A stretch of 63,229 nucleotides of DNA, counting the filler, from Octopus bimaculoides (taxonomy: Eukaryota), in NCBI RefSeq assembly GCF_001194135.2. It is 5 parts of 5 records of this genome, joined end to end, with 100 filler letters (N's around TTAATTAATTAA, not from the genome) between each part and the next. Parts side by side here need not be neighbours in the genome. Positions count along the whole stretch, not along the records: positions 51,428 to 57,343 come from NC_069009.1; 4 more parts are not named here. The stretch is one strand, 5' to 3'. The notes beneath the pieces are model-generated. The model worked only from the letters and a program-made list of their open reading frames with translations, was not told the DNA's origin and made no database searches. Positions 51,266 to 57,343 of this stretch are shown here, piece by piece. The translations under genes were made by a program, and so were the position numbers. Numbering within the stretch: the first letter of the stretch is position 1; every line of letters begins with the position of its first letter.

Positions 51266-51437
51266 CATACATATATGTTTATATACATATATGTTTATAT
51301 ACATATATGTTTATATATATATATATANNNNNNNNNNNNNNNNNNNNNNNNNNNNNNNNNNNNNNNNNNNNTTAATTAATTAANNNNNNNNNNNNNNNNN
51401 NNNNNNNNNNNNNNNNNNNNNNNNNNNATATATATCG

Positions 51438-51471
<34 letters not shown>

Positions 51472-51761
51472 GTATATATATGTATATGCATGTAAGTATG
51501 TATGTATTTAAGTATGTATTCAAACAGACGAGTTGGTCATGAGTGGAACAGCTTTAATAATAAGTCTACTTGATTTGATGGATGATATGAAGTGAAAAGT
51601 CACCACCCTCACCACCACCACCACCAAAAGTAGAGTTAATTGCCCTGTTATTTCTAACCTTGTTTTGAGTCACCACATAATTATACGTTGAGTGGCTGTG
51701 ATGGTGGTGATGACGACGGTGGTGTGGCATTGTTGTCGATTCTGTTCGCTATTTTTTATAA

Positions 51762-51960
51762 CCCTAGGTCAGTTTTGACCGAGCTGACCTACAAGTACAC
51801 TCAATGGTTACCCATCGGTGACCACCCCGTCTGAAATTCCCAACTCGATGGTTTCTGCCCCTCTCGAGACCTTTGAGCTGACATTTCAGATGTATGCCCA
51901 ACGATGTTCCAGCCGTGGCCATCCTGTCTTTTATTCAGACATAGTGTATCTAGGACTACA
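51762..51960 (+). repeat. Unclassified short interspersed repeat (family C); related pieces at ~16680-16860 (+), ~28960-29040 (+), ~45045-45125 (-)
   Basis: Shared degenerate block resembling GATCAAAG..RTTCCA.CYRTGRCCATC, usually preceded by AACCCTA.GTC or AGCCCCG.GTCAG. Confidence 0.55.
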
Positions 51961-52622
51961 TTAACTAATTGTTACTAATAGTATAGTTGGAAAGAGTAGT
52001 GGCTGTAGGTGTTGTTTATATACATACATACATACACATACGTAATATATCCATATATATGTATATATATATATATACACACACACACATATACAAACAA
52101 TATATATACATATATACATACATATATGTATANNNNNNNNNNNNNNNNNNNNNNNNNNNNNNNNNNNNNNNNNNNNNNNNNNNNNNNNNNNNNNNNNNNN
52201 NNNNNNNNNNNNNNNNNNNNNNNNNNNNNNNNNNNNNNNNNNNNNNNNNNNNNNNNNNNNNNNNNNNNNNNNNNNNNNNNNNNNNNNNNNNNNNNATATA
52301 TATATATATATATAAATGTATAATAAACTTTATAATAAACTTTAATATAAATGAATTTAGCGTCAAAACTCTTATTTAAATTTGTGATATATAACCAAGG
52401 AGATTGATCCATAAGGAGTCTACTATAGACCATTGTGGACGAATTTTTGCTATTTTGGTAACGACTACGTTTTATCTCACCAAAACATTGTGGAGATATC
52501 ATTATATGAACACCTATATATATATAATGTAGTCATACATATATATAACATATATATATATACGTATTCATACATATATATGGCATACATACGTACATAC
52601 ATGCATGCATACATGCATATAT

Positions 52623-52900
52623 ACCGGGTGCGGCATATACATTTACCCATTATTCAAACAGAAACTGATATACTCTTGTTTGAAAAAGTAATCGCGAATA
52701 TTGTACGAAGCATCCTAAATTCTTCTTGTTTCATTGTCCACCCTTAATTGACTGTGGCGGGTCAAACAAAACACACGAAGAAATTGTTGTATTGAAAATG
52801 GCTGGTGTAAAGAATAATGAAGTGATAAAGCAGTCGAGAAAATATGTTGAACGCAAACGGTGGCCATTTTGAATTGTAAATACATACGTAAAATATTGTC
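52623..52900 (+). mobile_element. Tc1/mariner-superfamily deletion relic
   Basis: TA-CCGGGTG start and a C-terminal ANGGHFEL* motif near 52853-52879. The right TIR is not clearly recognisable. Confidence 0.4.
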
Positions 52901-53474
52901 AATGAATATAACAGTCAATTTGTAAACTTTCGTTTACCAAAGCCTAAAACTTTATAGTTGGGGATGGTCATATTTTTGCCAATTAAAGGCATGCGCTATA
53001 TACTTGGTCTTCGGTTCAACTTCATTATTTTTTTTTATTTTAGCGTCTTTTGTCTAAGCTCTTTGGTCACACATTCTATGAGATACGTGGGATAAAGTGG
53101 GCTTAGAGAAAGGACACTAAAGTAAGAATAATGATAGGGATGAAGTGAAGAACGAGTATACAGTGTGTGTGTTTAGTTGGGGAAAATATGACCATCTCAG
53201 AGTATAACAATATCTGCTTCAGCATACGATTCGACATACGAGGAATCTTGCAAGACAAATATACAAACGTGAAGCTTTTTATTTTATGATAAAATATATA
53301 ATGGGTAAGCATATGTACAGGTGTGTGTGTATCGTGTGTGCGTGAGTTTGTGTGTGTGTGTGCGTGTGTGTGTGCACGCGTACGTTTGTATTTAAGCAGA
53401 TGTATGTCTATGAAAGAACAGCTAGATAGATTGGTGGACGTATGTATTTATACCTGTTCGTGCCTATACATATA

Positions 53475-53687
53475 CAAGGGGGTGCTGAAAAGTTCCTGGC
53501 TTTAAGGGTGTAGCGAAAGACCTGGCTGAAGGCCCAACCTTCCGAGTTCTTTTACAGGGCTTAGAAAAACTGAAGGACTGCTGCAGTAAGTGTGTGAATC
53601 TGAGAGGGGAACATGTTGAGTAAAATCATAACTGATTCACCTGTATTTTCTTTTACCCAAAGCCAGGAACTTTTCAGCACTCCTTCG
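53475..53687 (+). mobile_element. Mariner-derived MITE (internal deletion derivative), 213 bp
   Basis: ~28-bp TIRs CAAGGGGGTGCTGAAAAGTTCCTGGCTTT / AAAGCCAGGAACTTTTCAGCACTCCTTCG with TA on both sides. The interior retains a mariner C-terminus GLEKLKDCCSKCVNLRGEHVE*. Confidence 0.9.
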
Positions 53688-53724
53688 TATGTATAGATAC
53701 ATAGTGTGTTTATGCGTTCATGGT

Positions 53725-56700
53725 TTAAATGAATGGCGCCCATATTGGAGACAGGAAGTCTATAAGCGATTGTATTACGAGAATAATCCTACCTTTTTTC
53801 GTGTTTCCAGCACCCGCTTCACGTTTTAATTGTTCAATACGCGGTACCGTGGTGCAATCAGTCTTTGGCGTGGTTTCGTCGGTCTTACCTCCGACGGCTT
53901 CCACCTCGACCGTGGGTTCGGCGTCGCCGATACGTGTTTCGCATGATGGAGGTGCTGTTTTATGGTCACCAGCGACACGTTTGACGAAATTTCCGGTTGA
54001 CTCCGTCGTGCGTCGCTCACAAAGCGCCTCCATAACGAAGTTGTCTCCTTCACCCATGTAGCTTTTATTTTCATGTTGCTTGACGTGGTCGTCTGCTTCT
54101 TCAGGTCTGGTCCAGTTGCGATGAAATCCAGTTTCCAGAATCGTACAACTCAAGGATTGCATCGACTCGAGTTGACCGTCGCCGATTTTCTCTTCCTTAA
54201 TATCTAAAGCTATAGCCATTTGGAAATCTATGGTTTCATCAGTTTCCAATGAAGAATCTTCACAACGTTGACAATCTGTGTTCGATTCGCCAGTGGTGCT
54301 CGTTTGTGGGGAAAATGTATTTTGTTCAGATGACAGTTTGTTTGTCGACTGCAACTCTCTGTGCATTTCTTCATGCGTTGTGTTGCAGATATCACGAAGA
54401 CTTTCACCACTTTCGTTCCGTTCCTGGTCTTGATTCTTGTCATCGTTCGTGTTGCCACTTAAATCTTCGTCCTGTTTATTCAAAATTTTGAAATCAGGGA
54501 AAGAACGATCAGTATTTTCAGGGATTTCCAAAACGGGGGACATTTCACTGCGATTGAAACGAGACTCAAAAGAATCTACAATGCTTTTCGCCATTTTGTC
54601 TTCTTCAAATTTCCAGTTGAGACCTTTGTCGACAGAATCGACTATGCACAAACTCGTGTTATTTTCTTTTTCAACCTTATTCTCGTCGTTTTTGCAGTTA
54701 TTTTCCAAGATAATTCCTTCGTACTCGCTTGTGTCACTGTTAAAATGTCTTCCTTTTCTCTCCGTTGGTAAAACGACGTTCACGTAGCTTTCAAGGATTT
54801 CTTCGCTTTCAATGTTTATCTCTTCCTCGTTGTAAGTCAACCTCCTCGTATTAGTCTCTTCGCAAAGATTAGCTGCGTATTTTGTGACCGCACACTTATT
54901 TTCTGGTTCCTCTACATACGACTTTGAGCAGTAGAGTTCTTCAGTTAAACTGTCATTCCGCTTCTTGTCTTCCCCGCCATCTTCAATGATGTCACACGTC
55001 ACGTGAGCTACGTCACAATCGGTGAATTCATGGACGGCATCTTCTTCAAATTCGAACGAAGTACTCGGAGTAGCAGTGCCTTCAAAATTCACAGAATTTA
55101 CAGAATGAGATTTAGGAATTTGAGGCCCCGCATTAGATATTGAATCTTTACCCTTCACAAATTCGTCCTTCTCGGAAAACTCAGAGTCTTGCAGATTGCG
55201 TCTATTGAACTCGAAGACGCTTCGATTATTAACAGAATTGTTAATGTTGGGTCCATAAACCGGGTTAACATCTCCTCTCTTTATCGTTTCCAAATCTTCA
55301 ACACCAGTAAATCCTAAAACAACGTATTCGGGCAACTCTTTATCTTCCATCTCGTCTCGCATGAAGTCTTTCTTTGCACATACTGTGGAAATATCAGTAG
55401 TAACATCTTTTGAATCATCGTCTGAATGCTCGCATAGTTTCCCGCCTTTCACCAAATTCGATCTCGTACAGGGGCATCCTTCTGCTGGTTCAATGTTTTC
55501 CTCGATCACTGGATAATCCATATCTTTGTAGCAGATGCTTGTGAACAGCGTGTAGTCGCTGTCTTCCGTTAAATCTGAGTAACTACGATCTTTGTCCGTC
55601 CCATTAACCTCTCCGCTAGCAGAAGCGGCAGATGTATTGCCTGTATAAGAAATGCAACGTTCGACCGAGTAGCCAGTGACTTCGTCATCGTAACGATTAT
55701 TCGAAGTGTCGTTGGCTTCGATACTGCGGCGCGTGTACGTCCCTGTCTGTTGTAAGGGACACAAGTCAGGCTCACCCTCAACAGAACACCGCATATCTAA
55801 AGGGTTAGACAACGCCGCGTTAGTGATATTCTGTCTGGAATAGCCGATCGGTTCGTCGTCACAATGAACTTCGTGGCCTGTACCCTTTCCTTCCGTTCGT
55901 CGTTCTGTGATTCCGTCGCCGTCTCGATTTACAGGATGTTCGTCTCCGTCCGTAGCGTCGCTGCAATCACTGTACATGCTCGCTGCACGTCCTATAACAT
56001 TGGAACCATCGGCATCTCCGCCCCGACGGTGCTCCGCGCCGTCTCCAACGTTTCCTCGGTAGCCGGTCACGTGATGCATGTGATAGCCATTTCCGTTGTC
56101 CCCTCTCTTGCTAGTCATTCCTGCAGCAAAATCTGCAACGTCCGCTTCCGATTCATATCCTGTCACAGCACCGATATTTCCGCTTTTTCTATGCTCAGCA
56201 TTCACATCGTATCCGGTGACGTCTCGACTACTCTCACTTTCGCAACGATCCTTTACTTCCTGTCCGGCGCCGAACCCGGTGGTGATGGCAATTTCATCGG
56301 CCTCTTTTCCGTCGCCATCCAATCGGGAACCTTTGTCGCATGTATAACTCGTGACGTCTAAGAAACCGCTATAACAACTTCCGGTTGGTTCATAATTTCT
56401 CTCTACTCCGCTGGCTCCTTCTTCGAGAGAATGGTACCCGGAAGTTGTGATACTAGTCTGTCTTAGGTACCGGGGTACAACTTTATCACTATCGCTGAAA
56501 CCAACAGTACTATTACCACACGTGACCGAGTCGACGGCCTCGACACAGCTGTCACCACTAGCGCCACCTTGCCGGCAAGTCATGTCAGAAAGGGTAGACA
56601 TTTTGTCTGTCCAGTTTTCATTCATATAACCGAATGTGCAAACATCTCCAGTGCAGACGATGTTTGCGCTGCTGTCCACAGCCTCGTTTTCAACCCTCTG

Positions 56701-57125
56701 CCTCCACCTTTCATCCGAGTACTGTCCATTATCTTCTTCTTCTGGGATATCATCGAGATTGTCACATCCGGCGAATATGTTTTCATATCCAGTATATACA
56801 CTGTCACTTCCGCTGTGATTTTTGCCTTTTTCAGAGTACATGTTACTACTTCCGGAATAGGTGGCGTCAATTTCAGCGAAGATATTTCTTCTGGCATATA
56901 AATTGTCGCTCGCAGACAACATGTTACTTCCTGAATACGCAGAATCACTTCCGAAATTGATAGTGTCCTGTTTAGTGTACATTGCCTCACTTCCAGAATA
57001 CATAACTTCGTTATTTCCGGTGTACATATTTTCAGTTCCGGTATATGATTTGTCATTTCCAATGAACATATTACTTCTTTCATTAGTCGTATCACTTCCG
57101 GGATAAACGGTGTTATCCCCAGACA

Positions 57126-57177
<52 letters not shown>

Positions 57178-57343
57178 TCCGAGGTATAAGTCGTCACTTC
57201 CGGAATATTGGAGGAGACAGCTGCTGCCGTCATTATCGTGGTGGCTGTGCTGATAGTCATTGTCTTGCATGTCATTGGTGTTTTCTTTACACGTGACTTC
57301 GAAGGCAGTTTTAGCTGTGCAGTGAACAGCAGCTTCAGCGCAT
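53725..57343 (-). CDS. Giant coding exon (about 1200 codons) of an unidentified gene; acidic, Ser/Asp/Glu/Asn/Thr-rich, probably disordered; 5' end lost in gap, probable splice donor at 53792
   Basis: 1181-aa stop-free ORF (57270-53725) in non-microsatellite sequence that is GC-richer than its flanks. The same frame stays open 24 codons upstream of the first ATG (CAEAAVHCTAKTAFEVTCKENTND) to the N gap at 57344. Minus-strand AAAAAAG|GTAGGA at 53793/53792 looks like a donor, after which the translation (RIILVIQSLIDFLSPIWAPFI) looks intronic. No recognisable domain. Confidence 0.85.

What the first reader, a model, noticed from the sequence alone, without database searches (positions are those of the whole stretch)
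56755..57210. Cryptic heptad array x-Y-(S/T)-G-S-(D/E)-N in the giant exon
Seen: about 19 degenerate units, mostly 7 aa: QYSGSDD, LYLGNNN, VYPGSDT, MFIGNDK, SYTGTEN, MYTGNNE, MYSGSEA, MYTKQDT, INFGSDS, AYSGSN, MLSASDN, TYSGSSN, MYSEKGK, NHSGSDS, VYTGYEN, IFAGCDN. A DNA-level relic TATTCCGGAAGTGA recurs, showing origin by 21-bp tandem duplication with the frame preserved. Known: Tyr flanked by Gly/Ser is the sticker pattern of prion-like condensate domains, and regular aromatic-Gly-Ser repeats can form beta-solenoids or cross-beta polymers. Inference: an undescribed repeat domain, either phospho-regulated or self-assembling.
Basis: partly seen in the sequence, partly recalled or inferred. Interest (0 to 1): 0.7.

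Follow-up and report, generated by a model that had tools for sequence, protein, structure and literature searches.

The report
Decayed 21-bp coding repeat, octopus orphan gene
The seven-residue Tyr/Gly repeat is real, but it is best read as an old, decayed 21-bp coding minisatellite in a long, acidic, probably unstructured exon of an uncharacterised Octopus bimaculoides gene, which is an ordinary kind of feature with no sign of a new folded domain.

Summary
On the minus strand, 56755-57210 encodes about 19 degenerate units, mostly 7 aa, with consensus M-Y-S-G-S-D-N (ATG TAT TCC GGA AGT GAC AAT). The periodicity is far above chance at both the protein and the DNA level.

The array lies in a reading frame of at least 1183 codons. 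This frame is the giant exon of Octopus bimaculoides LOC106869044 (XP_014770039.1, uncharacterised). The RefSeq model starts at an internal Met, 320 codons downstream of the array, so the array is unannotated. The frame is nevertheless clearly coding.

Gly is almost always GGA in the array, against 39% in the rest of the ORF. This shows that the units share descent from a 21-bp duplication. Divergence among units is near neutral (pN/pS 0.73), except at the aromatic position (0.18).

No orthologue or paralogue turned up among 1.84 billion representative proteins. The only look-alike is the translation of a young fish minisatellite.

The array scores just under threshold against the grass antifreeze beta-roll family (29.3 bits, cut-off 30). 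That match reflects a shared N-x-hydrophobic-x-G heptad rather than homology, and AlphaFold2 gives no fold (pLDDT 46).

Best reading: a disordered, acidic segment with evenly spaced aromatic residues and acidophilic Ser/Thr sites. Any function is inferred. Conservation in orthologues could not be tested.

The parts
56755..57210 (-). Degenerate heptad array, about 19 units, consensus M-Y-S-G-S-D-N (ATGTATTCCGGAAGTGACAAT). Units with start coordinates: QYSGSDD 57210, LYLGNNN 57189, [N17], NMSGDNT 57129, VYPGSDT 57108, linker TNERSN, MFIGNDK 57069, SYTGTEN 57048, MYTGNNE(V) 57027, MYSGSEA 57003, MYTKQDT(I) 56982, NFGSDS 56958, AYSGSN 56940, MLSASDN 56922, LYARRN 56901, IFAEIDA 56883, TYSGSSN 56862, MYSEKGK 56841, NHSGSDS 56820, VYTGYEN 56799, IFAGCDN 56778.
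   Evidence: Translation and codon table. Periodicity statistics. DNA relic count.
57013..57060 (-). Best-preserved stretch of the 21-bp period (units SYTGTEN and MYTGNNE with neighbours).
   Evidence: Tandem Repeats Finder: period 21, 2.3 copies, 75% matches, score 52.
57126..57177 (-). Perfect (AAT)17 microsatellite encoding Asn17. It is embedded in the array, grown out of the N-N-N tail of unit LYLGNNN.
   Evidence: Tandem Repeats Finder: period 3, 17.3 copies, 100% matches. Translation.
53793..57342 (-). Giant coding exon of Octopus bimaculoides LOC106869044: at least 1183 codons, with the 5' side cut by the edge of the piece.
   Evidence: No stops in frame over 1183 codons. ORF residues 517-1179 are 100% identical to residues 1-663 of XP_014770039.1.
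53791..53792 (-). GT of the splice donor AAG|GTAGGA that ends the giant exon (phase 1).
   Evidence: Sequence. P0001 continues ...NTKK-AADHED... with residues that are not encoded in the piece.
55792..55794 (-). ATG (Met517 of the ORF translation) where the RefSeq protein model starts. The array lies 320 codons upstream of it, in the same frame.
   Evidence: P0001 begins MRCSVEGEPDL. The upstream 516 codons have 0 stops, against 7-71 in the other five frames, and the same codon-position composition as the annotated part.
55669..56445 (-). Second, dispersed Tyr/Gly motif set downstream of the array: VTGY four times (aa 375, 393, 425, 555), plus TTSGY and TTGF. Isolated heptad-like units also occur downstream, some of them beyond this range (CYSGFLD, MYSDCSD, SYTGNTS, SYSDLTE).
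   Evidence: 6 motif matches against 0.40 in shuffles. Every VTGY codon varies at synonymous sites. Y[ST][GD] occurs 5 times against 0.93 expected.

Best explanation
The array is a real, translated, degenerate tandem repeat. It began as a 21-bp coding minisatellite (ATG TAT TCC GGA AGT GAC AAT, encoding MYSGSDN) that expanded by slippage or unequal exchange inside the giant exon of an octopus-lineage orphan gene, LOC106869044. It then decayed to about 54% DNA identity between units. All later indels were multiples of three, because a frameshift would destroy the roughly 1000 codons downstream.

The product is most likely an intrinsically disordered, net-acidic, low-complexity segment. A hydrophobic-aromatic pair ([M/V/I/L]-[Y/F]) recurs every 7 residues, separated by small polar and acidic spacers (S/T-G-S/N-D/E-N).

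If it acts at all, I infer that it works as a multivalent array of weak aromatic contacts. Each unit also offers an acidophilic-kinase-type Ser/Thr (S/T-x-x-D/E), so phosphorylation would tune its charge. It is not a stably folded domain.

Shown: existence, periodicity, duplication origin, frame preservation, exon membership, lack of relatives.

Inferred: translation of the unannotated part, disorder, and the sticker and phospho-acceptor roles.
For: Periodicity and motif excess. The DNA relic occurs 7 times in the array; all 8 matches in the window compare with 0.46 expected.

Gly is GGA in 13 of 15 codons in the array, against 39% in the rest of the ORF, and position-5 Ser is AGT. This indicates identity by descent.

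The frame is open for 1183 codons. The upstream 516 codons have 0 stops, against 7-71 in the other frames, with the same codon-position composition as the annotated part. The exon and its donor site are confirmed by XP_014770039.1.

The aromatic column has pN/pS 0.18, against 0.73 overall. [MVIL][YF] occurs 11 times against 2.2 expected, and [ST]xx[DE] 8 times against 3.8.

Mean hydropathy and net charge place the array and the whole exon on the disordered side of the Uversky boundary. AlphaFold2 gives pLDDT 45.8, pTM 0.10 and no strands. There is no Pfam family above threshold and no PDB relative.
Against: The RefSeq model omits the array, and no transcript or peptide evidence was available here. 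Overall pN/pS among units (0.73) is close to neutral, and five of 19 units have lost the Gly.

The low pN/pS at the aromatic column is biased, because I anchored the units on that residue. It could also reflect staggered duplication times.

With 14% acidic residues and no [G/S]Y[G/S] triplets, homotypic condensation is less likely than for FUS-like domains.

Single-sequence AlphaFold2 is a weak negative for a fold. The 29.3-bit match to a beta-roll family is register-dependent.
Confidence: 0.55

Rival explanations
1. Neutral passenger. The array is translated but has no function of its own. It is a tolerated slippage product in a fast-evolving disordered exon, and only the reading frame is under selection, for the sake of the downstream sequence.
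For: pN/pS among units is 0.73. The Gly column shows little change at either synonymous or non-synonymous sites, which fits recent shared descent rather than selection. Five of 19 units lack Gly. A perfect (AAT)17 run inside the array shows that slippage is still active. No relatives exist among 1.84e9 representative proteins. A fish genome yields a similar heptad simply from a young 21-bp minisatellite.
Against: An aromatic residue is kept in 16 of 19 units, although the third base of that codon is scrambled (TAT 9, TAC 4, TTC 4). The hydrophobic residue before it is strongly enriched. Heptad-like units and VTGY motifs recur elsewhere in the exon, the latter with fully varied synonymous codons.
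Confidence: 0.3
2. Beta-roll or beta-solenoid. The roughly 105 residues from MFIGNDK to IFAGCDN fold into about 7 coils of 14-15 residues, like the Lolium perenne antifreeze protein, with N-x-[Y/F]-x-G replacing N-x-V-x-G and forming an aromatic ladder.
For: Pfam PF21300 (LbR_Ice_bind) matches the 124-aa core at 29.3 bits, E 9e-7, over profile positions 5-97 of 97. Nine composition-preserving shuffles give no such hit. BLASTP against PDB 3ULT aligns 113 residues in register with only 4 gaps. Unit lengths of 7, 7, 8, 7, 8, 6, 7... are compatible with 14-15 residues per turn (LpAFP geometry from PMC5744647).
Against: The score is below the curated cut-off of 30 bits, and only 21.3 bits when flanks are included. 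The same profile also hits an unrelated fish minisatellite translation at 22.7 bits, so it responds to any hydrophobic-x-G-[ST] heptad. Because all units descend from one heptad, the match is effectively one coincidence counted many times. Identity to 3ULT is 22-33%, and phmmer against the PDB does not retrieve 3ULT. AlphaFold2 gives no strands, pLDDT 45.8. Only 3 units have N-x-aromatic-x-G intact. A bulky Tyr or Phe would have to occupy the core position held by Val in a very thin roll (inference). The array is embedded in sequence predicted to be disordered.
Confidence: 0.08
3. Not translated. The protein really starts at Met517 as in RefSeq, and the array lies in a 5' UTR, an intron or a dead exon remnant.
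For: XP_014770039.1 begins at Met517 of the ORF. No transcript data were available here.
Against: There are 516 stop-free in-frame codons upstream of Met517, while the other five frames carry 7-71 stops. The codon-position composition is the same as in the annotated part (G/A-rich first position). All indels between repeat units are multiples of three. The assembly contains N gaps, which can truncate gene models.
Confidence: 0.04

Closest known systems
Lolium perenne antifreeze / ice-recrystallisation-inhibition protein (PDB 3ULT; Pfam PF21300 LbR_Ice_bind)
   Same: Both are tandem units of about 7 residues with Asn, a hydrophobic residue, then x-Gly-Ser/Thr in the same register: T-V-S-G-S-N-N in the grass protein, M-Y-S-G-S-D-N here. 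The match just under threshold depends on register, and the unit lengths are compatible with 14-15 residues per turn (PMC5744647).
   Different: The score is below the family cut-off. An aromatic residue replaces Val. Acidic residues are frequent, a third of units are broken, no fold is predicted, there is no plausible need for ice binding, and the array is embedded in a giant acidic disordered exon. The resemblance is convergent, not homologous.
FET-family (FUS/EWS/TAF15) low-complexity, prion-like domains with degenerate Tyr-anchored short repeats (from general knowledge)
   Same: Both are degenerate short repeats with one evenly spaced Tyr per unit in a Ser/Gly/Asn-rich context. Both arose by repeat expansion and are predicted to be disordered.
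   Different: There are no [G/S]Y[G/S] triplets (0). Tyr is preceded by Met, Val or Ile. The array is poor in Gln, has 14% D+E and a net charge of about -0.09 per residue. There is no RNA-binding context.
RNA polymerase II CTD heptad YSPTSPS (from general knowledge)
   Same: Both have a heptad period, begin with Tyr-Ser, are Ser-rich and are potential multi-site phospho-acceptors.
   Different: The array has no prolines and no match to YSP.SPS. The protein and its context are unrelated.
Bacterial ice-nucleation protein 16-residue repeats (AGYGSTxT...; PMC9418140)
   Same: Both have Tyr-Gly-Ser/Thr-rich tandem units. In the bacterial proteins, outward Tyr ladders mediate assembly of a beta-solenoid.
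   Different: The period differs (16 against 7) and so does the residue order. There is no sequence match in Pfam or the PDB.
Liparis tanakae hypothetical protein TNN65988.1 (P0002), with heptad E-D-I-H-T-G-T repeated about 18 times
   Same: This is the only non-self hit among 1.84e9 representative proteins (E 1.3e-5). It has the same x-[H/Y]-T-G-[T/S]-[E/D]-x heptad, encoded by a 21-bp unit.
   Different: It is a young minisatellite (90% DNA identity) inside a doubtful 330-aa fish gene model that spans 33 kb. The consensus units share only 11 of 21 bases by my hand comparison of the units. It comes from a vertebrate, not a mollusc, so it is a convergent translation product and not an orthologue.

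Membership tests
Degenerate coding minisatellite (tandem repeat in a disordered exon) | DNA-level periodicity equal to the peptide period times three | tested here: met
   Lag 21 is the top autocorrelation lag (0.439, against a null of 0.364 +/- 0.015). Tandem Repeats Finder calls period 21. The relic occurs 7 times in the array; all 8 matches in the window compare with 0.46 expected.
Degenerate coding minisatellite (tandem repeat in a disordered exon) | Units share codon choice (identity by descent), not just amino acids | tested here: met
   Gly is GGA in 13 of 15 codons in the array, against 39% elsewhere in the ORF. AGT accounts for 10 of 21 Ser codons, against 23% elsewhere.
Degenerate coding minisatellite (tandem repeat in a disordered exon) | Indels between units preserve the reading frame | tested here: met
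   Relic spacings are 78, 21, 42, 45, 60 and 102 nt, all multiples of 3. The frame is open throughout.
Pfam PF21300 LbR_Ice_bind (grass antifreeze beta-roll) | Score at or above the curated gathering cut-off (30 bits) | tested here: not met
   29.3 bits for the 124-aa core, and 21.3 bits for the 196-aa N-terminal part of the ORF that includes the upstream flank.
Pfam PF21300 LbR_Ice_bind (grass antifreeze beta-roll) | N-x-V-x-G / N-x-V-x-x-G motif with a small aliphatic inward-pointing residue (PMC5744647) | tested here: not met
   Tyr or Phe replaces Val. N-x-[YF]-x-G is intact in only 3 units.
Pfam PF21300 LbR_Ice_bind (grass antifreeze beta-roll) | Beta-roll fold with 14-15 residues per turn | tested here: inconclusive
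   Single-sequence AlphaFold2 gives pLDDT 45.8, pTM 0.10 and no strands. No alignment was available, so this is a weak negative.
Pfam PF21300 LbR_Ice_bind (grass antifreeze beta-roll) | Ice binding or ice-recrystallisation inhibition | not testable with these tools
   This needs a bench assay.
FUS-like prion-like / low-complexity domain | [G/S]-Y-[G/S] triplets | tested here: not met
   0 in the array, against 0.70 expected by shuffling.
FUS-like prion-like / low-complexity domain | Evenly spaced aromatic residues in polar spacers | tested here: met
   Lag-7 aromatic periodicity, P=0.004.
FUS-like prion-like / low-complexity domain | Low content of charged residues | tested here: not met
   D+E 14%, K+R 5%, net charge -0.09 per residue without the Asn run.
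FUS-like prion-like / low-complexity domain | Phase separation or fibril formation | not testable with these tools
   This needs a bench assay.
RNA polymerase II CTD | Y-S-P-T-S-P-S consensus heptads | tested here: not met
   0 matches to YSP.SPS in the ORF.
Cephalopod reflectins | [M/F]D-x5-MD-x5-MD reflectin motif (from general knowledge) | tested here: not met
   0 matches in the ORF. No Pfam hit.

The most novel reading that the evidence does not exclude
The array, possibly together with the dispersed VTGY and Y-S/T-G units downstream, may be a cephalopod-specific self-assembling module. On this reading, a heptad beta-roll or cross-beta stack with a Tyr/Phe ladder arose de novo from a 21-bp minisatellite and converged on the grass antifreeze and adhesin-head heptad architecture. 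That would be a new class of aromatic-ladder solenoid in an animal protein.
Probability: 0.07. Interest if true: 0.6.

Novelty: new member of a known kind. Interest (0 to 1): 0.22.

Why it matters
The value is modest. The finding shows that the RefSeq model for Octopus bimaculoides LOC106869044 is truncated at its 5' end by at least 516 codons. It also documents a clear case of protein sequence born from a minisatellite in a lineage-restricted cephalopod gene. The amino-acid-level signal is strongest not in the array but in the dispersed VTGY motifs. If orthologues keep the aromatic register, the gene would be a tractable example of how repeat expansion creates multivalent linear-motif arrays. 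Otherwise it is ordinary low-complexity sequence.

Tried and rejected
Homologue searches. The first word-indexed search with the whole ORF returned nothing, not even the species' own protein. I suspect, but did not test, that the Asn17 run swamped the 8000-candidate list. Repeating without the Asn run found only XP_014770039.1. The C-terminal 195 residues of that protein found nothing. The exhaustive search of 1.84e9 representatives found only the self hit and a fish minisatellite ORF. Exact-protein look-ups for P0001 and for the 1181-aa ORF found no contig, so I could not read beyond the edge of the piece.

Structure. AlphaFold2 on the array (pLDDT 45.8) and on the Cys-containing stretch just downstream, about aa 201-370 (pLDDT 35.5), gave unusable models, so I ran no fold search. 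phmmer against the PDB returned only poly-Asn linker artefacts.

Families considered and rejected: reflectin, the Pol II CTD, and FUS-type [G/S]Y[G/S].

Other scans. Rfam and the tRNA scan of the piece were empty. Literature searches for the locus name and for cephalopod Tyr heptapeptide repeats were empty. Later exons of the gene are not in the piece. I did not scan the metagenome or prokaryotic genome collections: the protein-level search already covered proteins predicted from public genomes and metagenomes, and an octopus orthologue is not expected in those collections.

Full report
WHAT IS THERE

The piece (51428-57343) is eukaryotic genomic DNA. It has an AT-rich, microsatellite-laden stretch containing an assembly gap and one very long minus-strand reading frame. 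Read from 57342, that frame is open for 1205 codons. It runs off the edge of the piece on its 5' side.

The exhaustive protein search found one 100% match. ORF residues 517-1179 equal residues 1-663 of P0001, which is XP_014770039.1, 'uncharacterized protein LOC106869044' of Octopus bimaculoides. P0001 then continues (...NTKK|AADHED...) with 180 residues that are not encoded in the piece. This places the exon end at the donor AAG|GTAGGA, with the last exon base at 53793. The 'giant exon' is therefore real, at least 1183 codons long.

CHECK OF THE OBSERVATION

Tiling gives 19 units between 57210 and 56758, with consensus ATG TAT TCC GGA AGT GAC AAT, encoding M-Y-S-G-S-D-N.

- The motif [YF]-x-G-x-[DENS] occurs 11 times in 153 residues, against 0.12 in shuffles. 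It never occurs in the other 1008 residues.
- Lag 7 is the dominant spacing for aromatic residues and for Gly (P=0.004 and 0.0006 against the best of 21 lags).
- At the DNA level, lag 21 is the top autocorrelation, and Tandem Repeats Finder calls a 21-bp period at 57013-57060.
An eighth match, with 3 mismatches, lies outside it, and 0.46 matches are expected in the whole window.
- The spacings are all multiples of three.

The only correction is that the relic recurs in degenerate form (54% mean DNA identity between units).

ORIGIN

Inside the array Gly is GGA in 13 of 15 cases, against 39% in the rest of the ORF. The position-5 Ser is AGT, and Phe is always TTC. Shared synonymous choices mean the units are copies of one 21-bp ancestor, not independent solutions to a structural need.

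A perfect (AAT)17 tract (Asn17) has grown from the Asn tail of the second unit, so slippage is still active at this locus.

Aggregate Nei-Gojobori counts among 15 registered units give pN/pS of 0.73, close to neutral. The one strongly constrained column is the aromatic position (0.18), where TAT and TAC are mixed but the first two bases are kept. I anchored the units on that residue, so this figure is biased towards constraint.

IS IT TRANSLATED?

The RefSeq model starts at Met517 and so omits the array. The 516 upstream codons nevertheless have no stop, while the other five frames have 7-71 stops. They also have the same codon-position base composition as the annotated part. The scaffold contains N gaps, which could have truncated the model. 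I conclude that the array is coding. Transcript proof is lacking.

RELATIVES

Three word-indexed searches and one exhaustive search of 1.84e9 representatives found no orthologue or paralogue.

The only other hit, P0002 from the snailfish Liparis tanakae, carries E-D-I-H-T-G-T about 18 times. Its locus shows a young 21-bp minisatellite (18.4 copies, 90% matches) inside a doubtful gene model. This is convergence. It shows how easily such heptads arise from translated minisatellites.

FOLD OR NO FOLD

Pfam has nothing above threshold. The 124-residue core does match PF21300, the grass antifreeze beta-roll, at 29.3 bits against a cut-off of 30, over nearly the whole profile. Nine composition-preserving shuffles gave no such match.

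The Lolium protein (PDB 3ULT, confirmed) is built of N-x-V-x-G heptads, at 14-15 residues per turn (PMC5744647). BLASTP aligns the two in register at 22-33% identity. The octopus heptad N-M-Y-S-G-S-D thus mirrors N-T-V-S-G-S-N.

I do not read this as membership, for six reasons:
- The cut-off is not reached.
- The same profile also picks up the fish minisatellite product at 22.7 bits.
- All octopus units descend from one heptad, so one chance resemblance is counted many times.
- The aromatic residue would sit where a small Val packs.
- Only three units keep N-x-aromatic-x-G.
- AlphaFold2 gives pLDDT 45.8 and no strands. This last point is a weak negative, because only a single sequence was available.

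Hydropathy and net charge put the array and the whole exon on the disordered side of the Uversky line.

HOW IT PROBABLY WORKS

I commit to the following reading. The array is a disordered, net-acidic segment in which a hydrophobic-aromatic pair recurs every seven residues ([MVIL][YF] 11 times against 2.2 expected), spaced by S/T-G-S/N-D/E-N. Each unit offers an S/T-x-x-D/E site (8 against 3.8 expected, P=0.015). That is the anatomy of a multivalent array for weak interactions, with charge tunable by phosphorylation.

[G/S]Y[G/S] occurs 0 times and acidic residues make up 14%, so homotypic condensation is less likely than partner- or cation-dependent behaviour. These functional steps are inference.

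The main rival is that the array is a neutral passenger (0.3). The beta-roll reading (0.08) and non-translation (0.04) trail behind.

BEYOND THE COORDINATES

Downstream of the array there are isolated heptad-like units (CYSGFLD, MYSDCSD, SYTGNTS, SYSDLTE). Y[ST][GD] occurs 5 times against 0.93 expected.

There is also a distinct motif, V-T-G-Y, four times, plus TTSGY and TTGF (6 against 0.40 in shuffles). The four VTGY copies use different synonymous codons at every position. This is better evidence of selection at the amino-acid level than anything in the array itself.

VERDICT

The feature is real, statistically solid and unannotated. It is nevertheless of an ordinary kind: a decayed coding minisatellite in a disordered exon of an orphan gene. 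It is a new member of a known kind, and interest is low to moderate.

Noticed in passing
window 56220-56209, 56166-56155, 56070-56059, 55680-55669 (minus strand; ORF aa 375, 393, 425, 555), plus 56445-56434 and 56283-56272: The tetrapeptide V-T-G-Y recurs four times (DVTGYD, AVTGYE, HVTGYR, EVTGYS), with TTSGY and TTGF nearby: 6 motif matches against 0.40 in shuffles. Each of the four codons varies at synonymous sites between copies, which suggests selection on a short linear motif.
   Followed up: partly
window 53467-53695: A MITE-like element lies in the intron about 100 bp past the exon end. It has 37-nt terminal inverted repeats (53467-53503 and 53659-53695, 86% complementary). As single-stranded DNA it folds at -48.5 kcal/mol, z = -7.5 against shuffles. 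Its family was not identified.
   Followed up: partly
window 57126-57177: A perfect (AAT)17 microsatellite encodes Asn17 inside the array. Its purity suggests recent expansion and probable length polymorphism. I suspect, but did not test, that it swamped the first word-indexed protein search.
   Followed up: partly
window 55792-55794 (minus strand): The RefSeq protein XP_014770039.1 starts at this internal ATG (Met517 of the ORF). The 516 in-frame stop-free codons upstream indicate that the public gene model is truncated at its 5' end.
   Followed up: yes
window 56622-57275 (minus strand, second frame): A 217-aa ORF in the second frame is also open across the array (I-P-E-V repeats). This follows automatically, because the 21-bp unit has no stop in that frame. 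There is no evidence that it is used.
   Followed up: partly
window 52133-52295 and 51438-52625: There is an assembly gap (a run of N) inside a very AT-rich stretch (15-20% GC) of TA/TATG/ATAC microsatellites. A (GT)n tract lies at 53321-53374. The intron after the giant exon is longer than 2.3 kb, and no later exon of the gene lies in the piece.
   Followed up: yes
L001:18266-18652 (Liparis tanakae SRLO01000226.1): A young 21-bp minisatellite (GAGGACATCCACACTGGGACT, 18.4 copies, 90% matches) is translated in a hypothetical fish protein as E-D-I-H-T-G-T heptads. It also scores 22.7 bits against the grass antifreeze Pfam profile, which shows that the profile is permissive for this class of heptad.
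   Followed up: partly
window 51692-51711 and 57241-57260: An 80% similar 20-mer encodes His-rich peptide on the minus strand in both places (HHHHSH in a short intronic ORF, YQHSHH just upstream of the array). This is probably chance.
   Followed up: no
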